Shown: positions 1-61,589 of the stretch, one piece after another
Layout: every line of letters begins with the position of its first letter
Numbering within the stretch: the first letter of the stretch is position 1
Virus record (IMG/VR): IMGVR_UViG_3300032334_002567
Span: 186,001 to 250,000 of that record
Strand: one strand, 5' to 3'
Length of the DNA: 64,000 bases
The notes under the pieces: generated by a model
What the model was told of the DNA's origin: nothing
Seen by the model: the letters and a program-made list of their open reading frames with translations, nothing else
Databases searched by the model: none
Position numbers and translations under genes: made by a program

Positions 1-1
1 A

Positions 2-580
2 ATTATTGATGACGTTTTGTCTTCTGAGGAATTAGAATTAATTTCTCTGTTTCTATCCAACTTAGGCCACTGGTCCCAGTCGAATGGGGGTGGCCTAAGT
101 TGGCAGGGAAGGATCATTCATGACTACAACGTATTCGAAGTAAACAATCAGTTGGGTCTTTTGTTGGCAAGTTTTAGAAATAGATTCCAGAAAGCTATTT
201 CTGAAGCATACCAACTCAAGGACTTGATTTATCCTGATACATTTGAAATTGTTCGTTGGGATGTTGGGTCTGAACAATCGCCTCATTGGGATGATATGGT
301 CGGGACTACCGCATCGGAGGAACACCTTCAATGGTGCAAGCACAGGGCTTATGGCTCTGTGCTTTATTTAAACGACGATTATACAGGTGGAGAAACTTAT
401 TATTCAAATTATGATTTCCAAATAACACCAAAAGCTGGTCGTTTGGCTGTGCATCCGGGTGATAAGAACCATGCACACGGAGTTCGTAAGGTATTAGGAA
501 AAACTAGATATACTATTGCATCTTTTTGGACTTTCGATAAAAATTTTGAAGATATATGGATTCCAAATATAAATTCTTGA
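2..580 (+). CDS. 2OG-Fe(II) oxygenase, prolyl-4-hydroxylase-like (probably 5'-truncated by the window edge)
   Basis: HxD (HWD), YLNDDYTGGET, HGV and RYT motifs; frame is open back to position 2. Confidence 0.85.
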   Translation: MIDDVLSSEELELISLFLSNLGHWSQSNGGGLSWQGRIIHDYNVFEVNNQLGLLLASFRNRFQKAISEAYQLKDLIYPDTFEIVRWDVGSEQSPHWDDMVGTTASEEHLQWCKHRAYGSVLYLNDDYTGGETYYSNYDFQITPKAGRLAVHPGDKNHAHGVRKVLGKTRYTIASFWTFDKNFEDIWIPNINS

Positions 581-638
581 CTATTTGCTGCCATTTATTT
601 ATTTTTCATTTTATTTAATATATATCTGCGGAGGGATC

Positions 639-911
639 ATGAAAACATTTAGAGAATGGCAATTAAAAACAAACGAATCTGCGGATTATTCCGATTTGTT
701 TGATGCCGTCACCAAAGAAGGTGCGAAGCAGCAAATAAGCCAGATACTAGATGAGCACCCAGAATTGGTGGATGGAATAAAGAATTTTAAGCAGAATGAA
801 CCAGAAAAGTTCAAAAGAAGTATTAGTAATTTTAACAATAATAGCGTTGATTTAAATCTTTTGATTAAATTATCGAAGGGTAAGTTTCTCGGCTATTACG
901 ATTGGATGTAA
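639..911 (+). CDS. Hypothetical protein with head-targeting-like leader MKTFREWQL
   Basis: Start re-set to ATG 639 after GGAGGG; TATATA at 619-624. Confidence 0.7.
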   Translation: MKTFREWQLKTNESADYSDLFDAVTKEGAKQQISQILDEHPELVDGIKNFKQNEPEKFKRSISNFNNNSVDLNLLIKLSKGKFLGYYDWM

Positions 912-914
912 AGT

Positions 915-1199
915 GTGATAGGTGTTTGCCCTAGTTGTGGTTACAAACTAAACAACAAACTAAATGATGGTTTGTCAAATTGCATCAATTGCAATTGTGT
1001 CTTTAGTTCCACCGTTTTTAATGAGCTTTTAGCTGCCGCATGGCAGATAAGAAAAAACAATCTAACCATTGAGCAGGCACAAGAACAGATTAAAATAGAT
1101 AAAGACTTTATTGTTTTTGCTTTTTGCTTTGCTTCTCTTTTTGAATATTCGCATGATGAGTTTCTTTCTTTATTAAAAAAACTTGGTATCAAAAATTGA
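915..1199 (+). CDS. Small zinc-ribbon protein
   Basis: CPSC and CINC pairs. Confidence 0.6.
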   Translation: MIGVCPSCGYKLNNKLNDGLSNCINCNCVFSSTVFNELLAAAWQIRKNNLTIEQAQEQIKIDKDFIVFAFCFASLFEYSHDEFLSLLKKLGIKN

Positions 1200-1250
1200 T
1201 CGACTAGTTTGTTTCTGCTAAAATCTTCCTCGCAACCCGAGGACGCAGAA

Positions 1251-2258
1251 ATGAATGGAATAAGAATTTTTGGTCTAGGATCAAGCCTCAAATATGCAGA
1301 TAAAATTTCTGGTATTCTCGGTGTAAAAAGAACTCCACATATTGAACAATTTCACGATGACGATGAACCTTACGTTTTATCTCAGGAAAACGTAAGAGGT
1401 TGTGACGTTTTTATTGTTTCTAGTCTGCACTCATGCAATGAGGAAAGACTAGCAGACAAATTTTTAAAATTAATCTTATTTGCACGTTCTTTAAGAGATG
1501 CATCTGCAAAAAGAATAACTTTGGTGGTTCCTTATTTTGCTTTTCAAAGACAAGATAGAAAAACAGAAAGCAGAGCACCCGTATACACAAAGTATATTCC
1601 TGAAATAGTAGAAGGATTGCTAAGGCCAGATGATAGAATTTTAACTATGGATGCACACAATTTAAGTGCATACCAGAGCGGCCTCAGGATGATGTTGGAT
1701 CATCTAGAGGCAAAACCACTAATAGCAGACTGGTTTAGTCGTTCTGTTAATAGACTTTGGCCCGATCTAAATTTAGATAATTTGTGTTTTGCCTCCCCAG
1801 ATGAAGGTGGAGTTAAGCGAATAGGCTATTATCGGAAAAAAGTTCAATCAATAATGGGAATTTCAATTTCCACTGCATCTGTCTACAAAACGCACGAAGG
1901 AAGAGACATACATGCCCACGGAGTCATGGGCAACGTTGAAGGAAAAGATATTTTTCTTGGTGACGACATGATTTCTTCCGGTACCACCCTTGTAAAGGCT
2001 TATGACGCACTTTCAAGCATGGGTGGAAATGTGAGGGCTGCTATTGCGACACATGGCCTTTTTGTGGGTAAATCAAATGAAAATATTAAGTATCTGATTG
2101 ATAAAGGTGTCAGGATAATAACCACAGATACCATCCAAATAAATCGATTAAATGAAAATTTAAAAGAAAAAGTAATCACAATTCCAACATATGGGTTATT
2201 CGCAGAAGCAATTAGGTGTGTTCACAATGAAGAATCCATTAGTAGATTAATTTCTTGA
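1251..2258 (+). CDS. prs: Ribose-phosphate pyrophosphokinase (PRPP synthetase family)
   Basis: ENVRGCDVFIV, VPYFAFQRQDRK, SPDEGG, DDMISSGTTL and ATHGLF motifs; start re-set to MNGIR. Confidence 0.9.
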   Translation: MNGIRIFGLGSSLKYADKISGILGVKRTPHIEQFHDDDEPYVLSQENVRGCDVFIVSSLHSCNEERLADKFLKLILFARSLRDASAKRITLVVPYFAFQRQDRKTESRAPVYTKYIPEIVEGLLRPDDRILTMDAHNLSAYQSGLRMMLDHLEAKPLIADWFSRSVNRLWPDLNLDNLCFASPDEGGVKRIGYYRKKVQSIMGISISTASVYKTHEGRDIHAHGVMGNVEGKDIFLGDDMISSGTTLVKAYDALSSMGGNVRAAIATHGLFVGKSNENIKYLIDKGVRIITTDTIQINRLNENLKEKVITIPTYGLFAEAIRCVHNEESISRLIS

Positions 2259-2280
2259 AAAATTTTTTGAAAAATCAGTA

Positions 2281-2308
2281 TTGCATAACGGATTTTTTTT
2301 GATAGAAT
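2281..2308 (+). promoter_or_regulatory. Sigma-70-like promoter TTGCAT-N16-TAGAAT
   Basis: Intergenic, preceded by an A/T tract, upstream of the 2360 gene. Confidence 0.55.
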
Positions 2309-2359
2309 TCTCACCATTGGTTCGGTAGATTCTGTACCTGTTTCACAAAGGATTAAATA

Positions 2360-2557
2360 ATGGCTAGAGTTAAGAAGGAAACCCAGCAGAAAGTTTCAGT
2401 TATCATGGAAAAGGCCAATAATCTTTGGCAAGAAGTCTCTCCTAAGTTAAGCGAAATTCAAAAAGAATTCCGTGAAATTGGTGATGGTGCCACCACTCGT
2501 AACAAGAAGCTTGAAAGAGTCATCAAATATTTTTCGAGTTTTGTTGACAAGAACTGA
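2360..2557 (+). CDS. Hypothetical protein
   Basis: AAGGA RBS, 65-aa ORF. Confidence 0.65.
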   Translation: MARVKKETQQKVSVIMEKANNLWQEVSPKLSEIQKEFREIGDGATTRNKKLERVIKYFSSFVDKN

Positions 2558-2568
2558 GCTATAAAAAA

Positions 2569-3039
2569 ATGCCTAAAGGCAAAAAAGTTTGTAGCGAATG
2601 CGGCCAAGAAACTGGTGCCCGTGCCACCCAGTGTCGGTGCGGGCACCAGTTTTCTAGGCCCAAGCAAACGCCAATTGCTGTAGAAAAAACTTCTGTTGAA
2701 GTCAAAGAAACTGTTCAACCAACAGAAACAACGGCTTTTAAGAAGGCCAGCATATCTTGTCCAATAATTTATACTCCTTCTGGAAAGTGCCCTCACAAGC
2801 CAGAAGGATATCAAAAAAATTGGCCCGAAGGTCCGGTCGAGGAAAACGTTGTTGTAGAATGGGCGTTAAGGGTTTTGAACTCTGGTGCAGGTAGACGTTC
2901 TTATACTGTACACGCTGTTCAATACTGGGCTCATGAATTTTGGGATATAAATGGAGAAAATTGTGGTAAAGAATATAAAAGAGTTTGTGATATAATATTA
3001 AGAACTCTTTGCCCCCAGCAAGAATCTTCTTTTGAGTAA
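2569..3039 (+). CDS. Hypothetical protein with N-terminal zinc ribbon
   Basis: CSEC...CRCGHQF. Confidence 0.7.
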   Translation: MPKGKKVCSECGQETGARATQCRCGHQFSRPKQTPIAVEKTSVEVKETVQPTETTAFKKASISCPIIYTPSGKCPHKPEGYQKNWPEGPVEENVVVEWALRVLNSGAGRRSYTVHAVQYWAHEFWDINGENCGKEYKRVCDIILRTLCPQQESSFE

Positions 3040-3041
3040 AA

Positions 3042-3902
3042 ATGGGAAGTCCACATCATCAAGATTTTTTTATAGAGCCCTTTACCAGACCAAAAGGTCC
3101 AAATGGACCTTATATCAACGATCCCGGCTACGAAGTTCCTCCTAAAAAAATTGTTGTTGTGCCTTTTAAGGTTGAAAGCTCTACTCCAGTTTCTGGGTTC
3201 GATGGTTACTACAAAGAAATTGTAGAGCCTTTAGCTGGTAAGCTTAGAAGAGATTGGTTTGTTGCTCACTCATACTATTGTTTACCAATCATGGTAGGCA
3301 ATCAGTATGGTTTTTTAGTGAAATCTCTTAGAGATTATGAGCTATTCTGGGACGGCACAGAAAGAGATGCTCAAATTAATTTTCTAAATAATGATAACGC
3401 TGATAGACAGAACGTGCTAGCAAGATTCGGCTCAGGCGTTGTAAGCATACAAAACTTTTTTGCTCTAAAAACTGCTCCTGGCATTAACCTAATGACAATT
3501 CAACCCCCTAATTTGTTTATTCCGGGTTGTGTAGCCATGACAGCAATTATTGAAACAGATCAAATAAGAAGAGACTTTGCCTTCAGCTTTAAAATCACGA
3601 TTCCAAACTACAAAATAACGGTTAGAAAAGGAGATCCTGTTGGAGCTTTTATTCCTATTCAAAGATATTTTGTAGATGACTTTGAATTATCTATGGTTAA
3701 TGAAGTTTTTGAAGATAAAAGTCTATACGAAAATGAAATCGCTGACTCCTTTGAATTATCTAGACAAAGAGCCAATGAAGATAGAACTAAGCCGCATGAG
3801 TGCGGGAGGAAATACTTTAACGGAGAACATGCCTTTGGACAGAAATTTGATGACCACCAAAGGAATGTGCCTTCTAGATGCCCTATGCGTCAAACGCCCT
3901 AA
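3042..3902 (+). CDS. DUF6065-like protein (beta-rich, often near 2OG oxygenases)
   Basis: YYCLPIMVGNQYG, PPN, IETD and KGDP motifs recalled for this family. Confidence 0.65.
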   Translation: MGSPHHQDFFIEPFTRPKGPNGPYINDPGYEVPPKKIVVVPFKVESSTPVSGFDGYYKEIVEPLAGKLRRDWFVAHSYYCLPIMVGNQYGFLVKSLRDYELFWDGTERDAQINFLNNDNADRQNVLARFGSGVVSIQNFFALKTAPGINLMTIQPPNLFIPGCVAMTAIIETDQIRRDFAFSFKITIPNYKITVRKGDPVGAFIPIQRYFVDDFELSMVNEVFEDKSLYENEIADSFELSRQRANEDRTKPHECGRKYFNGEHAFGQKFDDHQRNVPSRCPMRQTP

Positions 3903-7849: not shown

Positions 7850-7923
7850 TGGGCCATCTAGGACTTGAACCTAGGACTTCCAAATTATGAGTTTGGCACT
7901 CTAACCAGCTGAGTTAATGGCCC
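7850..7923 (-). tRNA. tRNA-Ile2 (anticodon CAU, lysidine type); no encoded CCA
   Basis: Full cloverleaf GGGCCAT...ATGGCCC-A; anticodon loop CTCATAA; C4-G69 and C5-G68 TilS determinants; directly downstream of tilS. Confidence 0.9.
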
Positions 7924-40184: not shown

Positions 40185-41420
40185 ATGAATTTTAAACAAT
40201 GGCTCCTTACAGAAGAGCGTCAATCAATGGGTGCATCTATCCCCATGCCAGATGAAGTACAAATTCTATCCAATCTGTTTAGTAGTTTTGGAGCTAAATT
40301 GTATGCTGTTGGTGGAGCTATAAGAGACTACTTATACCATATATTCCACGATAGACATATTCCTTACAACCCCAAAGACGTAGATTTAACCACAGATCAA
40401 CCACCAGATCAAGTTACAAGAATACTTAGCTCTCCAGCAGCAGTTCAGCATGGGATTAGGGTCTTACCTAAGGGAGAAAGCTTTGGAGTTATCAGTGCTA
40501 TTATAAATGGCAAAGAATTTGAGATCGCAACCTTCCGAACAGAAGTCTATGATGCTGCCACGGGTGATGGCAGAAGACCAGATAGTGTTCAATACAGTAC
40601 AGCCGCTGAAGACGCCAAGCGTAGAGACCTTCACATAAACGCATTGTTCTATGATCTTCATAGCAAAGAAATACATGATTACAATGTAGATGAGAATGGA
40701 GAGGGAGAAGGATTTAAGGACATTAGGAACAAAAAAGTTAGAGTTGTAGGAGATCCTTTTGAGAGATTTAGAGAAGATAAGCTTAGAGTTTTAAGGCTTG
40801 TCAGATTCTTTTGTAGGTTTAATGAGGACGTGATAACCAGTCACTTAGATTCAAGAACATTATCTGCCGTAGATAACTTCAAGGATTTGAAGGGAGTTAG
40901 TGGCGAAAGAATAGCAAATGAATTTATTTCTGGACTTAAGACTTGTAAGAGTACAAAAAACTACATTTTAAGCTTCAAGTCTTTGGGGTTGATACCAACA
41001 ATATTTCCCGGCTTAAATGTTAATACTTCTGAAATGGATGCTATGGACTCTTCAAGAAACTCAATAGCAGTCACTGCTTTTTTACTCAGAGACAATGATA
41101 TAAAAGTTATTAAATCTAAGCTAAATTCACTCAAGTACTCTAACGAATTTATAAACACACTTTCTTTGGTGCTCATGGCAGCTTACAAATTAGATAAGTC
41201 TAATTTTATTCGTTTGTTAAGAATGAGAGATAATCTAAATGATAGCTTAAAAAGTTCGCTTGTTGAATTCGGTAAAATAAGTGGTCTGGAAAGAGAAATG
41301 AGTCATTTTGTACATTACACTCAAGTCACAAAATCAGAAGACTATATGCATCTACAGAATGAAAAAAGAGGAGAGAAGATGAGTGAAGATGAATACGAAA
41401 ATTATAAGGAAAATTCATGA
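40185..41420 (+). CDS. cca: Class II tRNA nucleotidyltransferase (CCA-adding enzyme) with leader MNFKQWLLTEE
   Basis: VGGAIRD, DVD, EIATFR.E, RRDLHINAL, FREDKLRVLR; poly(A) polymerase GRRF signature absent. Confidence 0.88.
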   Translation: MNFKQWLLTEERQSMGASIPMPDEVQILSNLFSSFGAKLYAVGGAIRDYLYHIFHDRHIPYNPKDVDLTTDQPPDQVTRILSSPAAVQHGIRVLPKGESFGVISAIINGKEFEIATFRTEVYDAATGDGRRPDSVQYSTAAEDAKRRDLHINALFYDLHSKEIHDYNVDENGEGEGFKDIRNKKVRVVGDPFERFREDKLRVLRLVRFFCRFNEDVITSHLDSRTLSAVDNFKDLKGVSGERIANEFISGLKTCKSTKNYILSFKSLGLIPTIFPGLNVNTSEMDAMDSSRNSIAVTAFLLRDNDIKVIKSKLNSLKYSNEFINTLSLVLMAAYKLDKSNFIRLLRMRDNLNDSLKSSLVEFGKISGLEREMSHFVHYTQVTKSEDYMHLQNEKRGEKMSEDEYENYKENS

Positions 41421-43567: not shown

Positions 43568-44280
43568 AAACATTCAAACAATACCTAGAAGATCGTCAAA
43601 TAATGATTTTTTCTACTAGACCGGTAGAGTTATATCATGGTTCAAACACTGGAGCCGATAATAGTGCTTTAAATAGCTTGTTAAAAGATGGCATTAAACC
43701 AACAGTAGCTCAAGGACATGGCCAAGGATCAGGTTTTTATGTATGGTCAGATAAAAACAGTGCCATCAACCACACTAAAGCCATAACCTCAGGCTCTATT
43801 ACAACTAATGCTAAGACAGACGGTCTTCCAATGATAGTAACAGTCGAAGCCATAGCAGACCCAGAAAAATGGGATTTAGATTATGAATCTAATAAACGAT
43901 CAATCGTTAATTGGCTACATGATAATTTTGAAAAACTTCAACCGCTATTGAAACCAGAAGACAAAGTTCAACTAAGGTCTAAACAGAATAGAGAAATCGT
44001 AAACAATAGAGATGAAAAAATAATGTCAAAGGGTGTAAGTGTTTCTTTAGAGACTTACAAAACACTATATGCTCAGAGTGAACCTAATATTCGGGACGGA
44101 GAGGTTATAGCACCAATTATAAATAAGCTACAACAAAAAGACCCTCAAACTGTACATAAATTCGAAGAACTATTTTTTGCCAACATGAAGCCAGGGGTTG
44201 CAATAAAGTATGTTGGCAGTGAAATATTAAGACCCAAAAGAATAGAGATATTTAAAGATGGTCAATGGGTTCAAGCTTAA
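43564..44280 (+). CDS. ADP-ribosyltransferase-like (H-Y clade) protein with leader MKTFKQYLE
   Basis: LYHGS...SLLKDGI...GSGFYV...A pattern of PARP/diphtheria-toxin-type ARTs. Confidence 0.6.
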   Translation: MKTFKQYLEDRQIMIFSTRPVELYHGSNTGADNSALNSLLKDGIKPTVAQGHGQGSGFYVWSDKNSAINHTKAITSGSITTNAKTDGLPMIVTVEAIADPEKWDLDYESNKRSIVNWLHDNFEKLQPLLKPEDKVQLRSKQNREIVNNRDEKIMSKGVSVSLETYKTLYAQSEPNIRDGEVIAPIINKLQQKDPQTVHKFEELFFANMKPGVAIKYVGSEILRPKRIEIFKDGQWVQA

Positions 44281-44636
44281 TTAGGGAATCTATTTCTGAT
44301 GTGGTCAACGTCTTTCATTATATCAGTGTTACACCTAGTCCAGTTTTTAAGGTGCCCGAAAAATAGATGACAATTAAAGCTTTCGCTTTCACAAAGAGAA
44401 ATTAGATTTTCTGGGTCAAGTTCTCTGTCAGGATCTAGATGAACTGGGACTATATGATGTGGCACAACATTCTTGTCGCTTCCGCATATCGCACATCTTG
44501 GATTATTTTCTAGATGTGCAAGTCTAACTTTTCTCCATTTTGAAGATCTTGGATATGCTAGAACCTGCACCTCATCTACAGAAAGGCTCTGTATCTGATC
44601 CCGAAAACAAAATAATTTTTTTAAGAACTCTATCAA
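44277..44636 (-). CDS. HNH endonuclease
   Basis: CAICG...PHHIVP...NLISLC...CH. Confidence 0.85.
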   Translation of the reverse strand: MIEFLKKLFCFRDQIQSLSVDEVQVLAYPRSSKWRKVRLAHLENNPRCAICGSDKNVVPHHIVPVHLDPDRELDPENLISLCESESFNCHLFFGHLKNWTRCNTDIMKDVDHIRNRFPN

Positions 44637-44648
44637 ATGAAACTTTCC

Positions 44649-45032
44649 TTATTCTGGTTTTGAAGAGTAGTGATTTCCACTTCTTGTCATTCTTGACCAT
44701 GAAGAGAAATCAGAAGATCTTAGCTTGCTACCTTTTTCAGCTAATCCAATAGCTTTACTAACTGCTTCTTTTATTTTGGATTCTTCTTTTAATCCATATT
44801 CTAAAGTTCTTTTAATTTCAAGAAAGACTTTTAGCAACTCACTATTTAATTCTACAAAGTTTGCTATTCTTTCGTCTTTTTCATCTATCATGTCTGCGAT
44901 TTGACGCAAATGATGTGTATGAGAAACCTCTGATTTGAGTGTGCCCGCTGGAGGAGTGCGTGGAAGGCCAATATCCCCGGTCGGCGGTACATTTTCGGAT
45001 GATGATTCTAAAAATTGCTCAAAACTTTTCAT
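44649..45032 (-). CDS. Hypothetical protein with leader MKSFEQFLE
   Basis: AGGAG RBS; TATATA at 45058. Confidence 0.7.
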   Translation of the reverse strand: MKSFEQFLESSSENVPPTGDIGLPRTPPAGTLKSEVSHTHHLRQIADMIDEKDERIANFVELNSELLKVFLEIKRTLEYGLKEESKIKEAVSKAIGLAEKGSKLRSSDFSSWSRMTRSGNHYSSKPE

Positions 45033-45126
45033 ATTTGTCTCCTGTAGAATTCACTTTTATATATCAAAACTTGACAAAAAAAGCAAATTAGGCTATCATT
45101 CACTGATCTTGCCAAGGAAATATCAC

Positions 45127-45585
45127 ATGAAAGAAAATTTGTGTAAATCTCTGAAGATTCTCCCCACAGACTACGAAGATTACGGGGGTGAGGTAAAGAG
45201 ATGGAAAGATCCAAATTTAAATTACCCAGATTGCTCTTCTGGATGTAAGTTTTTTGCTGAACTAAAAGGTTCTTTAGGCCTTGATTGGGGCGTTTGCTCA
45301 AATCCAAACGGCCCCAGAAAAGGAATGTTGACTTGGGAGCATCAAGCTGGTTTTGGATGTTTTGAACGTGAGCCGTCTTGTGAAGTAAAAGATGTAGTTC
45401 AAGAAGTCATAGATCATTTAAATAAGACCACAAAACTCCCAGAAGGTTGTGATTTAAGTGATCTTGGAAATGAAATCGGACTTGTAATCGGCAAATATGT
45501 CACAAGCAAAAACATTGGTTTCGAACTAGAAAGTTTCTTGTCGGGCGTTAAACACGGTGTTAGCTTAGTTGATGGGACACATTAA
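45127..45585 (+). CDS. DUF3027-like Cys-rich protein
   Basis: DCSSGCKFF...DWGVCSNP...LTWEH; TTGACA-N17-TATCAT at 45071. Confidence 0.6.
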   Translation: MKENLCKSLKILPTDYEDYGGEVKRWKDPNLNYPDCSSGCKFFAELKGSLGLDWGVCSNPNGPRKGMLTWEHQAGFGCFEREPSCEVKDVVQEVIDHLNKTTKLPEGCDLSDLGNEIGLVIGKYVTSKNIGFELESFLSGVKHGVSLVDGTH

Positions 45586-46197
45586 ATGGGCAAAGTTACA
45601 TTAATTGGCGACTTGCACGGCAAATATAAAAGATATCACGAAATAATTCGTGAGAAGGATCGCTTTCCATACACCGTACAGTTGGGCGATTTTGGTTTTG
45701 ATTATGAAACTCTTAAAAACGTTGATTCAAAAAATCATGTTTTCGTTGGAGGTAACCACGACAACTACGAAAAGGTTAAAACCGTCCCCAATTATCTTGG
45801 TGATTTCGGACACATGGTCAACTTTAACGGTTTAGACTTTTTCTATTATCGTGGAGCTTACAGTATCGACAGACAGTATCGCACTATAGGAATTGATTGG
45901 TGGGCAGAAGAACAAGTGAGCGTTGAAGGCTTTATGGAAGCTAGAGAACTTTATCGTGGGATAAAGCCTAGAATTATGCTTACTCATGATTGCCCCGAAA
46001 AAATAGCATATCTGATGTTGGAGCCCGGATGTAGAATATACCAAAATATGACGGGCTGGGCGTTACAAGAATTGCTCAATATTCACGAGCCAGAATACTG
46101 GATTTTTGGTCACTACCATCAATCTAAAACTATTAAGCATGGTAACACCACATTTATTTGCCTTGATGAACTAGAAACTTATGATATAATTGCATAA
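45586..46197 (+). CDS. Calcineurin-like metallophosphoesterase
   Basis: GDLHG, LGDFG, GNHD, THDCP, FGHYH. Confidence 0.92.
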   Translation: MGKVTLIGDLHGKYKRYHEIIREKDRFPYTVQLGDFGFDYETLKNVDSKNHVFVGGNHDNYEKVKTVPNYLGDFGHMVNFNGLDFFYYRGAYSIDRQYRTIGIDWWAEEQVSVEGFMEARELYRGIKPRIMLTHDCPEKIAYLMLEPGCRIYQNMTGWALQELLNIHEPEYWIFGHYHQSKTIKHGNTTFICLDELETYDIIA

Positions 46198-46305
46198 GTC
46201 TGAGTCGAAAGACTAACGAATCGCGGGTATTTCGTTAAATAGACAGCCGTAGACTTTGGTGGTTTTGTGTAAGACTGAAAACCACTTTTTAATGAAAGTT
46301 GAAAA

Positions 46306-48601
46306 ATGCTTGATTTGACCGGTCATGCTATGGATCACGGATGGTTTCCGCATAAACCCGAAACATGGAAATATAAATTTGCAACACTCCGCAAGCCAGT
46401 TGTTATGTTGCATTTGCAGAATTCTAAAGAAGTTGAAATTCCTGTTCCTGCTGGACAAACAGTGAAGCTCGTTATGGTGTCAAGATTTGGCGATGTTGGA
46501 GTCACCGAGGATCTAAATGCGGAGAACGGTTATGGAGTTCGACTGCCTTTAGACGATCTGTGTGATTGGAGAGCACAACCATAAATGAAACCTAAACTAA
46601 TTGAACTTTTGGAAGAAATCATTGAATCTGCTGATTCTTATTACATAGAATCAAATCCAAGCGTTCCAGTAATACTGGAAAAAATAGTTTTTAATGCTGC
46701 TAGTATGATTAAGATATTATCAAAGGATAATAAAAAAATATCTATCACAGAGGGTGACACTCTGGCAAATATCCGAACTACAGATTCTTATCGTGAAATG
46801 CCAAGTGGTCCGCCGCCTTCTTTATCTAAAAATGCAGAGATTAAGAGTTTGAAACTTACAGATAAAGAAATTGTGGCGATTGAGTGGTGTGTGGAGCAGT
46901 GGACAGGTATAAAAAGAGCAGAGACTCTCCGTAATCTATTAGAAAGAATAAAGAAAAATGAACGATAACAATGAAGTAGTTACTGTGACACTATCGCTTA
47001 CCAAACATCAGTGGAAAGACATTATCCAACATATTATGAACGACGCTAGTATGTTAGAAATGGGATTATGCGCCCAAGCTGGTCGTGATGCAGTAATGAG
47101 AATAACATCTAACGCACTAGAAATGGCAAACAAAATTAAAGATGCCACTGGTGTTGACGTAGACTTGGCAGAATGGAAATTTATGTATGGAGAAAGAATA
47201 AAGGATAAATAATGAATAACCTACCAGAAATAGACAAAATATCAGTAATGAATCTGAAACCAGACGATATACTAGTTTTTAGTACCTATGATAAAATAGC
47301 TAGTAGTGTTTATTCAAGAATAGATCAAAAAATAACCGATTGGAAAGCCCAAAACAATATAACAAACAAACATTTGATACTAACTTCTCTAAAACTAGAA
47401 GTATTATCAAAGGAACAGACTCAAAAACTGGAAAATAACTAATGACTAAAGAAAATGAACCTGTAGCATGGCACGTTTCCGATAAAAACGGTCAGGTGTG
47501 GGCTTGTGTTGAATCTGAGGATGAAGCACTTCAGATAGCTAGAGATTTCTCAAATACTGATGATAATCATATGGTATATTCGTCTTTTCCTGTTTATCGT
47601 CAGATAACCCTTACTGATGAGGAAATTGAGGCGATTGAGGCGGCTATTGACCGATTTAGAGATTGGGTCAATGGATTTGATGATGATGAACGTGCCACTA
47701 TCCTTCGTAATCTATTAGAAAGAATAAAGGATAATGAAAACTCTAATAACAATTGAAGTTGAAAATGAAATCGGCAATCCTTCTGTTGAAGAAGTAAAAT
47801 CCTTTGTTAAACAAATCTTAGAAAAAGGACTTGTTGGGAATTTTGACATATACAAGTATTGCCCAATGAGTGGAATATCGCTAAGAGTTTTAAGCACAGA
47901 AATTGAACGATTGAAACTTACAGATAAAGAAATTGAGGCGATGGCGTATTTTGCACATTTTTTCCCAGTATGTGCAGCAGAGATTGATGCAGCATCAGAC
48001 ATTCTTCGTAACCTATTAGAAAGAACAAAGGATAAATAATGATTACCTATAAAAATAAAAAGATCAAAATTTTACCCAAATCCGAATTACCAACAGTATT
48101 GGAAAAACATAACCAATCTGATATACAAGTTCCATTTCATCAGTATAATAATGATTTGATGGAGCATTTATGTTCTTTTGTGGACGATATGGAAAAGTAT
48201 GATCCTAAGAATGAATATGATACAGTTTACAGCTTTTATCATAATAATGAATGGGGAGTTATTGCGTTCAATCCAAATGTTCAACAAAATAAAACCTACT
48301 TAGTAAAGAGTACAAATGACCGAAACTAAACAAAAAAGCTGGACTGATCTTTTGGGCAAACCTCAAACATACGATCAGAGATTTTACAGGAGAATAAATA
48401 ATGACCCCAGAAGATATACATGATTTGCGATCAGTTGTTAATGAACAATTTGACTATATTAATAGACTCATGCCACTGGTTTATGCTGCAAACAAAGACC
48501 CTAAAGATTTTCAAACAATATATGAATCCATAGTAGATTGTAATAAAGTTATGATGGAGATAATTAATGGACCAAGTGGAACTATTGAGAAAATGATATG
48601 A
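46306..48601 (+). CDS. Array of small hypothetical genes (46306, 46585, 46958, 47212, 47442, 47734, 48039, 48401)
   Basis: Tightly coupled ORFs; three share an LTDxEI...LRNLLER C-terminus. Confidence 0.65.
46848..48041 (+). repeat. Dispersed direct repeats at gene 3' ends
   Basis: CGTAATCTATTAGAAAGAATAAAG at 46930 and 47706, variants at 48007 and 47191; TTGAAACTTACAGATAAAGAAATTG at about 46849 and 47911. Confidence 0.8.
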
Positions 48602-48770
48602 AAATACAAAATATTCCAAATTGGGAAAAAGATGATATAATTGCTTTGATAAACCATGATGGTGGAGTTATATCTTTTACACCCCCAAAGAATATGCCAG
48701 AAGGATGTAGTTGGGAAAAGATTCAAGAAAATGTAGTATAATTACTCAAATTAGTGCCCGAAATTCTACT

Positions 48771-50649
48771 ATGACTAAGCTAGATCAATTTATTTCAGAC
48801 TGTCCTAATTGCATTTCTCCTTGGAAATGTAATGGTCCTCATTTAGAAAAAGCATACGAGAACATTTATCGTAGCAAAGATGGGTATTACATGTTGTCTA
48901 AGACCACAAATATGTGGGTTTTTGTGGCTCACGAAGGCGAATACACAGCACAGAATTTGCTTGACATTGCAAACACACTCAGTATACTGAGTGAAGGATG
49001 TCACAAAGTTTAAATTTCAAAATTGAAAGTCAAAACATGAACGCTGAACTTGAACAAAAGCTTTTTGAAGAACACCCAGATTTGTTCCAAAACCGTCACA
49101 AATCTAGTCAAGAAAGCTGTATGGTCTGGGGCATAGAATTTGGTGATGGATGGTATGACCTCATAAAGAATGTGTGTGTTGAAATAACACGACATGAAAA
49201 AAATGTGACTAATGAAAAAGACGCTTATAGGTATAAAAAAGACTACGAACAGGTTAGATTTGATCAAACAAAACAAAAATTTGGTGGTTTAAGAATTTAT
49301 TACTCTGGTGGTGACGACCATATCAGAGGTGTAATTGATATGGCAGAAGCAATGAGCTACTGTATCTGTGAGGATTGTGGTAATAAAGGCACACCTAATA
49401 AAGGTGGTTGGATTACCACTCTTTGTGAAAATTGTAGGAGCAGAACAACGAAATAGATAATTGAGAACACATGAAAATTCAAATTAATAACGCAGAAATA
49501 ATAGATCTAACCACACCAGAACTATATGATTGTTGGCTTATAGATAAAGAAAGCTTTCATCATTGGTTAACTAGAAAGTCTAACCTAAAAATACCTCTAG
49601 AAGCGGATACTGGGACTTGGTTTTTCTCAGACAAAATATCTGGGGATAGAGTGTTTACTGTTGATTTAAAAGATTATATCGAATGGTGGAATCCTCTTGT
49701 TGCTTATATAAAAGCTCAACGTGTAGATAGCTACAAAATAATTGAAGAATCAATAGTTAATATAGAGTTTGAGACATATTTGAATAATTACCCAGAAGGA
49801 TATTGGGACTAAAACAACAGATTGGTGGAATTATGAACAAAAACATTATGAAAAAATGGATTAAAGCTCTTCGATCTGGCAAGTATAAGCAAGGCAGAGG
49901 AACTTTAAAACATTATGACACTAACGCACAAGCACGGCATTGTTGCTTAGGCGTTCTTTGTGAGCTGTATAACGATCAAATGAGAAAAGATGAAAAGAAA
50001 ACTTTGTCTGAAAAAACTCTTCATCATGATTCCTTTACTCATGGAGTAGTTGAATTTAGTAGAAACAGGGATTATTTGCCAAAAAAGGTTGTTGATTGGG
50101 CTGATATGAATGATAATCTTGGTTATTTTTATGATGAAAAAAATAAAGATAATTGCTTGTCTGATATGAACGATGACGGCAAAAAATTTAAAACAATAGC
50201 GAACATTATTGAGAAAAATTGGGAAAATATATGAAAAACATGATTGAATCTGAAGACTCTGATATCCGCCTACATAACCCAACATTAAAAGAATTGTCGA
50301 GAGCATGTGAGGATTTATGCCATAAATTGAGAGTACCATATGATCCGTATAAAATACGAGTCACTACAGACTATGGCGCCAAGGTGGTAATTTATTATGA
50401 TGGTGGTGGTGAGTTATTATGATAACAAAAACTAAAGACGTTCAACAACAATTGCTCTATCTTATCAGCAAAATAGAAAAGATAGAGGATTTGTGTAAAG
50501 AAGAAACTCTGGAACCATTCGGACCTTATCTTGACAGTATAGACTTTATGAAAGTGCTTGAGGGTAGTAAAAAGCTCTCATACTCAGATGGATTAGAGGC
50601 GGGGATATCTCACATGGCAAGTAAAATATTAAGGATACTCTACTCATGA
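48771..50649 (+). CDS. Six small hypothetical/conserved phage genes (48771, 49037, 49471, 49833, 50219, 50419)
   Basis: 49037 has GDGW...KQKFGGLR...CEDCG; 49833 has KWIKALRSGKYKQG; TTGACA-N16-TATACT at 48961. Confidence 0.65.
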
Positions 50650-50741
50650 ATTTACAGATTTTATATTTCATATTAATGGTAATGGAGAAGAATGGTATCA
50701 AATAAAGCTAAACAAATTCAACTATTGGAGTGTGTAGAAGT

Positions 50742-52199
50742 ATGAGAAAAGAAGAATTAGCCGTTGACCACATCATGTTGTTTGGTGGACTAGTTATATT
50801 TACAGCAGTATTATGTGCTCTTGTTCTTAATCCTATTCATAAAAAGAATGTAGAAAAGTTAAAATCAAACAAGCTAATAAACAGACAGAAAATTACCATC
50901 GACAATATTGTTGGTACCGTAGAAAGCATTCATCCTTGGGGACGTACAGAAATTGTTCCCATGAAGAGTATCGAATTAGAATATTTTGAATATGATGATC
51001 AATGGGTTATGTATGGTGATGTTGTTCAACCAGTTGGTCGCAAAGATTATTTTATGCCGGTCATGAAGGGCAGACTAAATCTTGATGTTAAAGAAATGAC
51101 TCAAACATGGATTGAATATGGTAGCTATGCTACTGGTCTTGATAAGGAAGCAGAAACTTATGAAGATTTTAGATTAGCTCATATCAAAGTCAAGCAGGGT
51201 AAAATTATTGATATACAATACTCTCATTATAGATTACTATCAAATAATACTTGGAGCATAATAGCGTCGTGGAAAGCAAAAATATAGAAGTTAAAGTGAT
51301 TGAATGGTTTGCGGAGGTGCGCAAGCCGCTGACCGTATTATGTTTTTTAATTTTGTGCGTCCCTATACCTGTTTTGGGTGAGAATTATATTTCACTTAAA
51401 AAAGATTTAGTAGTTACTGTTGACCAAGACTATATCGATTTACCTGTAATTTCGATTGATAGCGAAAAAATAGAAAGCAGAATTGGATACGGCATTTATT
51501 TTGAGTCTTGGTCATCTAAATCTTATGTTTGCCGTATTCATCTAAACAGAAATATAGATAAAATTAAAAAAGACACCGTAATTGTTTTAAATGGTAAATA
51601 TGAGATTGAAAAGACTTCTTCTGGTATGTTTGCACACAAGTTCTTCGTAAAAGAGCCGAAAGAAATAAGCTATATAGCCTGCGGTGTTTATGTAGACTAC
51701 TATAGAAGTCTTTTGGGCGAAAAAGTGCGACTGATATCCAGAACTTTTCCAGATGATTTTAAATAAACAGTATTTGACTTTATGCTTGCTTAATTGTATA
51801 CTAAGCACTTTAATTCACGTCAAAAAGGAGTTTCAAATGAAAAGATTGTTTTTTCTTTCTTTTATTGTTGGATGTGGAGTTTCCTCTAAGCCCGCCAAAG
51901 AAATTATAGTCGAGACTCAGCCGACAGTTGTAGTAGAGCAATCTGTTGTAGAGAATGAAACTCCAGATTTGCAAAGGATTGCTTATGATATTGGATACAA
52001 AAGAGGATACAAAAATTTTACGAGTCAGATGAACCTTGAGCCAACTGTTGAGTCTAAAGAATTTGCTTACACGGTTAAAAAGGAAGACGAAGCAATTTTA
52101 GAAACAGAAGCATATCAAGATATTATGATGAAAGGCTATGTAGATGGCTATCATAAAGCGGGTGAATCGATGGTACAAGGTTGCCCAAGAAAGAATTAA
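50742..52199 (+). CDS. Three membrane/secreted hypothetical proteins (50742-51287, 51251-51766, 51837-52199 lipoprotein-like)
   Basis: N-terminal hydrophobic segments; IVGC lipobox in the last. Confidence 0.55.
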
Positions 52200-58551: not shown

Positions 58552-59868
58552 ATGGAACATATATTTCAAAAAGAACAATTTGGCGAAGATTGGTTCACCT
58601 CTCCTGATCTTTATTCCCGTATGGTTAAAAAAGCAATAAATGGGAGCATATTTGTTGAGGTGGGTTCTTGGAAAGGCAAATCTTCTTCCTATATGGCCAC
58701 AGAAATAATTAACTCAAATAAGGACATACAGTTCTTTTGTGTTGATACTTGGGAAGGCAGTATAGAACATGAAGGAATGGAATTAGATAATCTTTATGAA
58801 ACTTTTTTAAATAACATGAAACCTTTAGAGTCTTATTATTTTCCTTTAAAAGTCACATCAATAGAAGCAAGTAAAAAGTTTAAGGACAATTCCTTAGATT
58901 TTGTATTTTTAGATGCTTCTCACGAATATGAAGATGTTAAAGCGGATATCTTGGCGTGGCTACCCAAAGTAAAACCGGGCGGAGTTCTCGCTGGTCATGA
59001 TTATTACCAAGAAACTGATTACTTTCCGGGTGTAAGTAAAGCAGTAGATGAAGTTTTAAACAACTTTGAAATTGTTGATAATTGTTTTGTGTTTTACAAA
59101 GACAAGCTAAGAAACTTCCCATCAGTTAATTTTATAAGCATAGAAGAAAGCCAACACAGAAGAGATTTATTAAAAAAGAAGTTCAATTCTTATGGTATCA
59201 AAAATACAACAGGATATGTTTTTGAAAGATATAAAGAAGGTGATTGCAACCTATTTGGAGAAATGATTATTGATCTAAAAACAGAAAGTAAAGGACCGGT
59301 AACATCTCACTTAAAAGCAATCAAAGATTGGTATAATAATACGAACGAACCTTATGCATTTTTCTGTGAAGATGATTTAAGCCTAGAAACAGTTAAATAT
59401 TGGAACTTTACTTGGGAAGAATTCTTTGCTCGACTCCCCAAAGATTGGGGTTGTGTTCAACTTGCTTGGATACGTGATGAGTTTTTCAAGTTCGGATACA
59501 AACTAAGAAACAGATGCTGGTGTGATTGGTCTGGGTGTGCCTACCTATTAAGCAGAGAACACGCTAAGAAGCTAATAGAATCATACCACTATGACGATAA
59601 CTTTTACCTAGACTTCAAAGGATCAGACACAGATGCAAGAGAAGATTGGGCTAAAGTACCAGTTATAGAAACAGTAATCTTTTCCCCAGTTACAAAGGTG
59701 TACTCTTTTCCAATGTTCGTTGAAGACGTAATTCTTTGTAACTCTACTTACCAAGAAGGCCAAGGAGATATGCACTTTGGCTCACATCACAACACAATAG
59801 AATTTTGGAAGAATATAGGTAAATATGCTTCTTTAAATGAACTTGTTGATCATTCTATTTTGCACTAG
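58552..59868 (+). CDS. SAM methyltransferase (Methyltransf_24-like) fused to a GT25-like domain
   Basis: VEVGSWKGKS, FVFLDASH, GGVLAGHDY; then SHLKAI, FCEDD. Confidence 0.82.
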   Translation: MEHIFQKEQFGEDWFTSPDLYSRMVKKAINGSIFVEVGSWKGKSSSYMATEIINSNKDIQFFCVDTWEGSIEHEGMELDNLYETFLNNMKPLESYYFPLKVTSIEASKKFKDNSLDFVFLDASHEYEDVKADILAWLPKVKPGGVLAGHDYYQETDYFPGVSKAVDEVLNNFEIVDNCFVFYKDKLRNFPSVNFISIEESQHRRDLLKKKFNSYGIKNTTGYVFERYKEGDCNLFGEMIIDLKTESKGPVTSHLKAIKDWYNNTNEPYAFFCEDDLSLETVKYWNFTWEEFFARLPKDWGCVQLAWIRDEFFKFGYKLRNRCWCDWSGCAYLLSREHAKKLIESYHYDDNFYLDFKGSDTDAREDWAKVPVIETVIFSPVTKVYSFPMFVEDVILCNSTYQEGQGDMHFGSHHNTIEFWKNIGKYASLNELVDHSILH

Positions 59869-61245: not shown

Positions 61246-61318
61246 GCGAGTGTAGCTCAGTTGGTAGAGCATTTGATTTCCAATCAAAATGTCGCCGGAT
61301 CGTACCCGGTCACTCGCT
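61246..61318 (+). tRNA. tRNA-Gly (UCC); no encoded CCA
   Basis: Cloverleaf GCGAGTG...CACTCGC-T; anticodon loop TTTCCAA; U73 discriminator; atypical T-loop ATCGTAC. Confidence 0.9.
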
Positions 61319-61589
61319 CTTTTCTTTAAATTTTGTCCAATAACCTTTACCGTTTACAAAATTTTATAAGAGAATTTTAATCTTTATTCGCTCTCATCTT
61401 TAAAAGGCTTAAATCCAACCCTTTTCATATTTTCGTATTCTTCTATATTCTTCCAGACTTCTCTTACTGGCTGGGACATTATTATTGCAATCAATAAGAA
61501 CAATAGTGCCAAAACACAAAATTGCATAGTTTATCTCCTGTGAAAAGTGACGTAAATTATCAAATACAATTGGAAAAATCAATCCTGAA

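What the first reader, a model, noticed from the sequence alone, without database searches (positions are those of the whole stretch)
46585..48041. Small-gene array with shared 3' modules that include the next gene's ribosome-binding site
Seen: genes 46585, 47442 and 47734 have unrelated N-termini but end in LTDxEIxA...LRNLLERxK, encoded by near-identical DNA, with a variable segment between the two conserved blocks. AGAAAGAA[TC]AAAGGATAA(ATAA)TG joins stop, RBS and next start at several junctions, including after 46958. Inference: homology anchors for recombinational shuffling of cassettes, or a shared C-terminal targeting helix.
Basis: partly seen in the sequence, partly recalled or inferred. 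Interest (0 to 1): 0.62.

Follow-up and report, generated by a model that had tools for sequence, protein, structure and literature searches.

The report
Shuffled small phage genes, shared tail
Three small genes of a giant phage share a two-helix tail whose conserved ends are the points where related phages have swapped gene pieces, a coding-sequence version of modular shuffling already known in phages.

Summary
Three ORFs (46585-46968, 47442-47756, 47734-48039) have unrelated N-termini. All end in LTDxEIxA[IM], then a variable 15-22 aa segment, then LRNLLER[IT]K. The 3' block runs into the next gene's Shine-Dalgarno site and start codon.

The window lies in a 381 kb phage record. An HMM of the module finds only these three copies in that record.

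In related metagenomic phages, N-domains, middle cassettes and tails (with their downstream genes) occur in many combinations: 13 N contexts x 9 cassette types, with 6 four-gamete violations. Of 30 homology-tract ends, 23 fall in the conserved blocks, which cover 27% of the region (P about 2e-8). Gene order differs in every relative examined. Anchor codons are far more alike than codon usage predicts (0.80 vs 0.37), and they use rare codons.

The module defines a large family absent from Pfam, PHROGs and NCBIfam: 1480 clusters at 50% identity. It is also present in high-GC phages, where it reads TLTDEEREAI...TLRGLLERTK.

AlphaFold2 models an alpha-hairpin with conserved base and variable tip. 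No informative structural match was found, and protein function is unknown.

Best reading: a conserved protein module whose coding blocks act as short homology anchors for recombination. The closest analogue is PeSL shuffling in T4-type phages, but here the anchors are intragenic.

The parts
46585..46968 (+). Gene A (127 aa). Extra N-extension 46585-46720; N-domain 'TEGDTLANIRTTDSY' type 46721-46834; extended anchor 1 46835-46881; cassette EWCVEQ type 46882-46926; anchor 2 LRNLLER 46927-46947; tail IKKNER overlapping the next start 46948-46968.
   Evidence: homology to L010/L014 starts at 46721; to L009/L033 at 46852-46858
46958..47212 (+). Gene without the module (84 aa). It ends in ERIKDK and carries the same junction (47191-47218). 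It moves independently in relatives: next to gene B in L005, after another N-domain in L033.
47212..47442 (+). Small gene (76 aa) without the module. It is present at 89-100% aa identity in L009, L014 and L025, in other neighbourhoods.
47442..47756 (+). Gene B (104 aa). N-domain 'PVAW...PVYR' 47442-47609 (beta-beta-alpha-beta in the model); anchor 1 47610-47636; cassette EAAIDRFRDW type 47637-47702; anchor 2 47703-47723; tail 47724-47756, which overlaps the start of gene C by 23 nt.
47734..48039 (+). Gene C (101 aa). N-domain 47734-47896; extended anchor 1 47897-47943; cassette AYFAHFF type 47944-48003; anchor 2 48004-48024; tail TKDK plus stop/SD/start junction 48025-48041.
   Evidence: in L014 the same N-domain carries a different tail with no module
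48039..48329 (+). Downstream gene (96 aa) started by the junction. In L028 it is found at 84% aa identity behind a different upstream gene.
47191..47218 (+). Junction copy (last codons, AAAGGA SD, TAA, ATG) between 46958 and 47212. It is 93% identical to 48018-48045.

Best explanation
The three genes belong to a large, uncurated family of small phage accessory proteins. The family is defined by a C-terminal two-helix hairpin of about 35-60 aa. Helix 1 begins at LTD-x-E-[IR]-x-A-[IV]; helix 2 ends at LR-x-LLER-[TI]-K. The two conserved blocks would sit side by side at the base of the hairpin. The segment between them, the tip, comes in discrete cassette types.

The genes lie in a hyperplastic run of tightly packed small genes of a jumbo phage. 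Within this low-GC phage lineage the two blocks are encoded by almost the same nucleotides in otherwise unrelated genes. Anchor 2 continues through the stop codon into the SD and start of the following gene.

I infer that these 13-25 nt exact (about 25-50 nt near-exact) stretches are crossover points for homologous recombination. The exchange would occur between paralogues and between co-infecting relatives, probably through the phage's own RecA/UvsX-like system. N-domain, tip cassette and downstream gene are thereby reassorted in frame, and a working translation start is carried along.

Shown: the mosaic, the breakpoints at the blocks, and the codon-level identity.
Inferred: that homology rather than selection alone places the breakpoints, and which enzyme acts.
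Speculative (about 0.3): the protein is an interaction module whose tip sets partner specificity in phage-host or phage-phage conflict.
For: Mosaic:
- 13 N contexts x 9 cassette types in the low-GC lineage, with 6 four-gamete violations (sequences).
- One cassette type is joined to up to 5 tail types or downstream genes.

Breakpoints:
- 23 of 30 ends of homology tracts (at least 100 nt, at least 84% identity) lie in the anchors, which cover 27% of the region. Binomial P = 2e-8.

Segment identities:
- Individual segments are 87-98% identical to relatives while their neighbours are unalignable.

Gene order:
- It differs in L005, L009, L010, L014, L025 and L028.
- The metallophosphoesterase gene lies on the other side of the array in relatives.

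Codon level:
- LRNLLER copies share 0.80 of codons against 0.37 expected from the genome's codon usage.
- They use rare codons: CTC 6%, CGT 13%, CTA 15%. Anchor 1 uses GCG (7%).

Protein-level conservation:
- The module is present in contigs of 53-66% GC with different codons.
- 1480 clusters at 50% identity match at E<=1e-3.
- Stand-alone module proteins of 46-65 aa exist.

Structure:
- AF2 hairpin H59-75/H83-101, pLDDT 80.5; isolated module pLDDT 82.3.

Translation signals:
- SD usage in the genome.
- In high-GC copies CTG GAG CGG ACG AAA TGA gives GGAG plus an ATGA/GTGA overlap.

Recombinase:
- RecA/UvsX-like ORF in the same record, 99.5 bits.

Not an assembly artefact:
- The same combinations recur in JGI, ENA, Logan and NCBI assemblies.
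Against: - No direct observation of an exchange event. The read tools could not be used.
- Exact identity between anchors in this genome is short (13-25 nt), at the lower limit for efficient homologous recombination.
- Breakpoints at conserved blocks are also what selection on random illegitimate joins would leave behind.
- Seven of the 30 tract ends lie at gene starts or domain starts outside the anchors.
- Protein function is entirely unknown. There is no family hit, and fold matches are generic helical hairpins only.
Confidence: 0.72

Rival explanations
1. Selection only. The blocks are conserved because the protein module and the embedded ribosome-binding site are needed. Joins arise by random illegitimate recombination, and only in-frame joins at module borders survive. 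The shared DNA plays no mechanistic role.
For: - The blocks are conserved as protein across GC-divergent lineages.
- Exact identity is short.
- Some breakpoints lie outside the anchors.
- In L014 the N-domain of gene C is joined to an unrelated tail right after its last conserved residue, with no anchor.
Against: - The 45-66 nt cassette has been exchanged repeatedly and independently on both of its sides, always in frame. This is hard to get from random joins.
- Anchor codons are far more alike than protein constraint plus codon bias predicts, and they use rare codons. Unrelated genes therefore carry the same DNA.
Confidence: 0.17
2. The module is a divergent ribbon-helix-helix (NikA/MobC-like) or other small DNA-binding domain: strand xLxLTD, helix A, loop or insert, helix B. 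The genes would then be a set of small regulators with different specificities.
For: - Repeated sub-threshold Pfam hits of 'RLTDAEREAIE' to the first 25 positions of NikA-like (E 0.074 and 0.0022).
- HTH_8 and HTH_38 hits at E 0.016 and 0.0013.
- One JGI automatic name, 'predicted DNA binding protein'.
- This rival concerns protein function and is compatible with the anchor mechanism.
Against: - All hits are below the curated cut-offs.
- A profile search of PDB sequences gives no RHH or HTH protein.
- AF2 models an antiparallel hairpin with no strand. VIA-align finds only generic hairpins, Z at most 6.5.
Confidence: 0.12
3. The conserved C-terminus is a targeting or turnover signal (packaging, export, localisation or degradation). 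It needs a free C-terminal end and is shared by unrelated cargo domains.
For: - The module is at the extreme C-terminus in 127 of the 149 best family members, and 51 end in exactly TK.
- N-terminal domains are unrelated.
- This rival is compatible with the anchor mechanism.
Against: - Stand-alone module proteins have no cargo.
- Proteins with 2-4 modules carry internal copies.
- A signal would not need a discrete, conserved set of tip cassettes.
- The C-terminal position is equally explained by the embedded SD and start of the next gene.
Confidence: 0.15
4. Programmed diversification within one genome: a DGR, or antigenic-variation-like switching from silent cassettes.
For: The layout, a conserved-variable-conserved segment in several nearby copies, resembles such systems.
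Against: - No reverse transcriptase in the record.
- Cassettes differ in length and are unalignable rather than differing at adenines.
- All copies are complete ORFs with start signals.
- Only three copies exist in the genome.
- Cassette types are discrete and shared between distant phages.
Confidence: 0.02
5. The mosaic is an artefact of metagenome assembly across short repeats.
For: - The anchors are repeats shorter than the reads.
- Several contigs begin or end near the module: L027 starts exactly at 47726, and L009 and L015 start close to a copy.
Against: - The same combinations recur in independent samples, assemblers and databases.
- Contigs of 200 kb and the 381 kb record carry several anchors without collapse.
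Confidence: 0.03

Closest known systems
PeSL (promoter-early stem-loop) cassettes of T4-type phages (Arbiol et al. 2010, PMC2839356; Comeau et al. 2014, PMC4122927)
   Same: Short conserved motifs are repeated between small non-essential genes of hyperplastic regions. Close relatives differ by insertions, deletions and replacements bounded by the motifs. The motifs carry expression signals, so the moved gene stays expressed. The phage encodes its own recombination machinery.
   Different: PeSLs are intergenic promoter-plus-terminator units. Here the anchors are coding blocks of a protein module, and the expression signal is an SD and start embedded in the last codons. Exchange therefore shuffles protein domains and a 15-29 aa cassette inside a gene, not only whole genes. 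The promoter-like scan is at chance level. Mini-circles were not testable.
Conserved glycine-rich motifs flanking hypervariable segments in gp38 adhesins of T4-type phages (Trojet et al. 2011, PMC3157838, listed; details from my own knowledge)
   Same: Conserved coding motifs delimit hypervariable segments within a gene and are thought to allow segment swapping by recombination.
   Different: gp38 is a structural host-range determinant with a known function. Here the proteins are small accessory proteins of unknown function, several paralogues sit in one array, and the 3' anchor reaches into the next gene's start.
Mosaic boundaries in lambdoid phages and relaxed homologous recombination by phage recombinases (Clark et al. 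2001; Martinsohn et al. 2008; De Paepe et al. 2014; from my own knowledge, not checked here)
   Same: Short, imperfect homologies at gene borders serve as exchange points between diverged phages.
   Different: Those cases involve Rad52-like or RecT annealases. This record shows a RecA/UvsX-like gene and no RecT or ERF, and the homologies lie inside genes.
Ribbon-helix-helix proteins (NikA-like, PF21983)
   Same: Small size, the pattern xLxLTDxE-helix-loop-helix, and a C-terminal position.
   Different: Scores are below the cut-off, there is no PDB sequence match, and the model is an antiparallel hairpin without a strand.

Membership tests
PeSL-type modular shuffling (T4-type hyperplastic regions) | Short conserved motif repeated among small genes of a variable region | tested here: met
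   Three copies each of anchor 1 and anchor 2 and four junction copies within 1.5 kb. Junction: 4 found vs 0.06 expected.
PeSL-type modular shuffling (T4-type hyperplastic regions) | Differences between relatives bounded by the motif | tested here: met
   23 of 30 homology-tract ends lie in the anchors, P = 2e-8. Gene order differs in all relatives examined.
PeSL-type modular shuffling (T4-type hyperplastic regions) | Motif is an intergenic sigma-70-like early promoter followed by a stem-loop terminator | tested here: not met
   The anchors are coding. Genes abut or overlap. Promoter-like sites: 37 found vs 34.4 expected; no terminator-like site was found at the junctions.
PeSL-type modular shuffling (T4-type hyperplastic regions) | Circular excision products between neighbouring motifs | not testable with these tools
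Diversity-generating retroelement | Reverse transcriptase and a template repeat differing from the variable repeat at adenines | tested here: not met
   No RVT_1 match in the 381 kb record. Cassettes differ in length (15, 20 and 22 aa) and are unalignable.
Simple tandem paralogues | Copies alignable over their full length | tested here: not met
   No BLASTP alignment between the N-terminal parts at E<=100.
Ribbon-helix-helix (NikA-like PF21983) | Score over the Pfam gathering threshold (27 bits) | tested here: not met
   Best scores 18.5 bits (P0028) and 13.6 bits (L011 copy). The three window proteins give no such hit.
Ribbon-helix-helix (NikA-like PF21983) | Beta-alpha-alpha fold forming an intertwined dimer | tested here: inconclusive
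   The monomer model has two antiparallel helices and no strand, and no RHH appears among the VIA-align matches. The dimer job used a construct lacking the putative strand and gave no verdict.
Any curated protein family (Pfam, PHROGs, NCBIfam) | Significant profile match | tested here: not met
   No hit over a curated cut-off for the three window proteins or for 20 relatives. Some sub-threshold hits pass E 0.001 (e.g. PF18938 aRib, 21.2 bits vs cut-off 27; NF040692, 21.3 vs 40).

The most novel reading that the evidence does not exclude
A widespread but undescribed phage mini-domain works as a coding-sequence-embedded cassette-exchange system. Its two conserved helix ends serve as recombination anchors, and its last codons carry a portable translation start. 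Phages can thereby reassort N-terminal effector domains, a small set of long-lived hairpin-tip specificity cassettes, and downstream genes. One cassette type is shared between a 36% GC and a 62% GC phage contig, so the pool would be common to very different phages. The arrangement would be maintained because it speeds adaptation in phage-host or phage-phage conflict.
Probability: 0.25. Interest if true: 0.75.

Novelty: new variant of a known kind. Interest (0 to 1): 0.58.

Why it matters
Most genes of large phages are small ORFs of unknown function in hyperplastic regions, and how these regions turn over is known in mechanistic detail only for PeSLs of T4-type phages.

This locus gives a second, different design. 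The repeated anchors lie inside the genes, so shuffling works at the level of protein domains and of a 15-29 aa cassette, and the 3' anchor brings a ribosome-binding site with it.

It also defines a large family with no entry in Pfam, PHROGs or NCBIfam: at least 1480 clusters at 50% identity. The family has a clear conserved-base, variable-tip layout. That makes it a tractable candidate for a specificity-bearing interaction module, and it deserves a profile in the phage databases.

Tried and rejected
- **Cultured phages.** blastn of 45000-50000 and tblastn of two family members against 50,697 GenBank phage records gave no match.
- **Bacterial genomes.** Two alignments were too variable for the scan. 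A third found only one Pirellulales MAG, so no host could be named.
- **Literature.** A search for the motifs returned only chance strings.
- **Fold searches.** Foldseek against PDB and BFVD, the ESM Atlas by features and by shape, and VIA-align wide gave no match beyond generic helical hairpins and uncharacterised phage proteins.
- **Homodimer of the module** (complex prediction on A4). No verdict, score 0.02. The construct also lacked the residues before LTD, so this result says nothing either way.
- **Ribbon-helix-helix or Fis-type HTH reading.** Only sub-threshold hits; kept as a low-probability rival.
- **DGR.** No reverse transcriptase.
- **RecT and ERF annealases.** Absent from the record.
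- **Promoters and terminators.** Promoter-like sites are at chance level. Terminator-like sites number 9 vs 4.2 +/- 2.5 expected, and none was found at the junctions.

Full report
**Setting.** The window is bases 186001-250000 of a 381,443 bp IMG/VR virus record, estimated 79% complete, with about 36% GC. It encodes a DNA helicase, a clamp-loader-like ATPase, a CCA-adding enzyme, glycosyltransferases and two tRNAs. The record also has a RecA/UvsX-like ORF. The finding lies in a long run of tightly packed, same-strand small ORFs with no family assignment. This is a typical hyperplastic region.

**The observation.** ORFs 46585-46968 (A, 127 aa), 47442-47756 (B, 104 aa) and 47734-48039 (C, 101 aa) all end in the same layout: LTDxEIxA[IM], then 15-22 variable residues, then LRNLLER[IT]K.
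- Their N-terminal parts give no BLASTP alignment at all.
- The two conserved blocks appear as three-copy DNA repeat families. Exact runs between the anchor regions are 10-25 nt.
- The junction motif occurs four times against 0.06 expected.
- The genome uses AAGGA/GGAG Shine-Dalgarno sites centred at -10 to -8. The AAAGGA in the tail is therefore well placed for the next ATG in the full junction form (47191-47214, 48018-48041).
- In the other two junctions the next start lies inside the upstream ORF.
- An HMM of the module finds only these three copies in the whole record.

**Relatives.** A word search with gene B found 27 metagenomic proteins. They do not look like orthologues with point changes.
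- The same N-domain (MTKENEPVAWHVSDKNG...) carries at least six unrelated middle segments.
- Each of those segments also occurs behind other N-domains.
- More loci from viral and metagenome collections gave 40 distinct low-GC module genes. These fall into 13 N contexts and 9 cassette types, with six four-gamete violations.
- Tails and the gene that follows vary independently of the cassette.
- The module also exists alone as a 46-65 aa protein (MTKPIILTDKEIEAI...).
- In L014 the N-domain of gene C exists with a different tail that has no module.

**Breakpoints and gene order.**
- blastn of the low-GC loci against the window shows segments of 87-98% identity flanked by unalignable DNA.
- Of 30 tract ends inside 46585-48100, 23 lie in the anchors plus or minus 6 nt. 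The anchors cover 27% of the region (binomial P about 2e-8). The remaining ends lie at gene starts or at the start of the N-domain of gene A (46721).
- Gene order differs in L005, L009, L010, L014, L025 and L028.
- The metallophosphoesterase gene lies upstream of the array here and about 4 kb downstream of the module gene in relatives.

**DNA or protein conservation?** Both.
- Within the low-GC lineage, LRNLLER is written CTY CGT AAT CTA TTA GAA AGA in nearly all copies, whatever the rest of the gene.
- Pairwise codon identity is 0.80 against 0.37 expected from the genome's codon usage, and the codons used are rare ones. Anchor 1 mostly uses GAG GCG, although GCG is 7% of Ala codons.
- In contigs of 53-66% GC, the same protein blocks (TLTDEEREAI ... 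TLRGLLERTK) are written with other codons. There they are again uniform among paralogues.
- In that lineage CTG GAG CGG ACG AAA TGA supplies GGAG plus an ATGA or GTGA stop-start overlap.
- So the blocks are kept by selection on the protein and on the embedded translation start. Within a lineage they are the same DNA in unrelated genes.
- That sameness, plus repeated in-frame exchange on both sides of a 45-66 nt cassette, is what makes homologous exchange the simplest account. The selection-only rival remains possible (confidence about 0.17).

**Family size.** A profile of the module against 1.84 billion representatives gave 1480 clusters at E<=1e-3 and 55 at E<=1e-10.
- In 127 of the 149 best hits the module is at the very C-terminus, and 51 of them end in TK.
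- Several proteins carry 2-4 modules, probably fused neighbours.
- Pfam, PHROGs and NCBIfam have no family for it.
- GenBank phages gave no match at the thresholds used.
- Species-representative bacterial genomes gave one Pirellulales MAG.

**Structure and function.**
- AlphaFold2 models gene B as a small beta-beta-alpha-beta domain (residues 9-51) followed by a helical hairpin (59-75, 83-101; pLDDT 80.5).
- The isolated module folds as the same hairpin (pLDDT 82.3). I infer that the conserved blocks then form the base of the hairpin and the cassette its tip.
- Fold searches returned only generic hairpins and uncharacterised phage proteins.
- Weak NikA-like and HTH hits raised a ribbon-helix-helix reading. 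The PDB profile search and the models do not support it.
- The dimer job gave no verdict and is not evidence either way.
- Function is therefore open. My working guess, at low confidence, is an interaction module whose tip sets specificity.

**Cross-lineage cassette.** The cassette of gene B occurs with 20 of 22 residues identical in a 62% GC contig (P0022/L036).
- Nucleotide identity is 76% over the 66 nt cassette and about 89% over its first 38 nt. It is 52-63% in the anchors and the upstream flank.
- The two copies share codons such as TTT, GAT and AAT, which by my own expectation are not preferred at that GC; codon usage of L036 was not measured.
- This suggests that cassette types are old and shared across very different phages, or that they have moved between them. 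It is suggestive only.

**Comparison with known systems.** The closest known mechanism is PeSL-mediated modular shuffling in T4-type phages (PMC2839356, PMC4122927).
- Shared features: repeated short motifs in hyperplastic regions, differences between relatives bounded by them, and expression signals carried along.
- The defining PeSL composition, an intergenic promoter plus terminator, is not met. This is therefore a new variant, not a member.
- DGRs, simple paralogy and assembly artefact are rejected on tested features.

**Limits.**
- No exchange event was observed directly.
- The host is unknown.

Noticed in passing
window 44277-44636 (-): A free-standing HNH endonuclease gene (119 aa; Pfam HNH 21.6 bits, cut-off 21.4) lies on the opposite strand about 2 kb upstream of the array. 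Homing-type nucleases can stimulate local recombination. No link to the anchors was tested.
   Followed up: partly
L036:355-510 versus window 47595-47760: The middle cassette of gene B is nearly identical in protein (20 of 22 residues) and 76% identical in DNA in a 62% GC contig, while the flanking anchors are only 52-63% identical. Cassette types seem to be shared across phage lineages of very different base composition.
   Followed up: partly
L028:1822-2010: A stand-alone module gene carries an internal duplication of about 15 residues (EIE-A-I/W-AEMDAILQ) inside the DWAEMD-type cassette. This looks like the product of slipped or unequal exchange.
   Followed up: no
L027 (IMGVR_UViG_3300037189_025222), bases 1-3349 = window 47726-51074: A 146 kb contig from another sample is 100% identical to the window over 3.3 kb and starts exactly inside the junction between genes B and C. 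This is as expected if the assembly graph branches at the anchor, but a repeat-induced break would look the same.
   Followed up: partly
L014:6116-6349: The N-domain of gene C occurs in a relative with an unrelated 24-residue tail instead of the module. N-domains are therefore detachable too, and here the join has no anchor.
   Followed up: partly
L015:162-668; P0028, P0029, P0031: Some family members have 2-4 modules in one ORF, joined by linkers that look like read-through of former gene junctions. Whether these are real fusions or sequencing frameshifts is unknown.
   Followed up: no
window 45586-46197 and loci L005, L007, L010, L014, L032: The metallophosphoesterase gene (Pfam Metallophos, PHROG 1649) lies immediately upstream of the array in the window but several kb downstream of the module genes in relatives. 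This shows larger rearrangement of the region.
   Followed up: partly
window 7850-7923 (-), 61246-61319 (+), 40185-41417 (+); G000:C1:94964-95767: The phage carries tRNA-Met and tRNA-Gly, a tRNA nucleotidyltransferase (CCA-adding) gene and a RecA/UvsX-like gene. At 58552-59865 there is a methyltransferase-glucosyltransferase fusion.
   Followed up: no
P0183 (NCBI MEW6144118.1): A 435 aa protein named 'TolC family protein' from a Thermodesulfobacteriota MAG sits in the same 90% cluster as a 41 aa stand-alone module (P0066). This is odd and was not examined. It may be a clustering quirk or a fused module.
   Followed up: no
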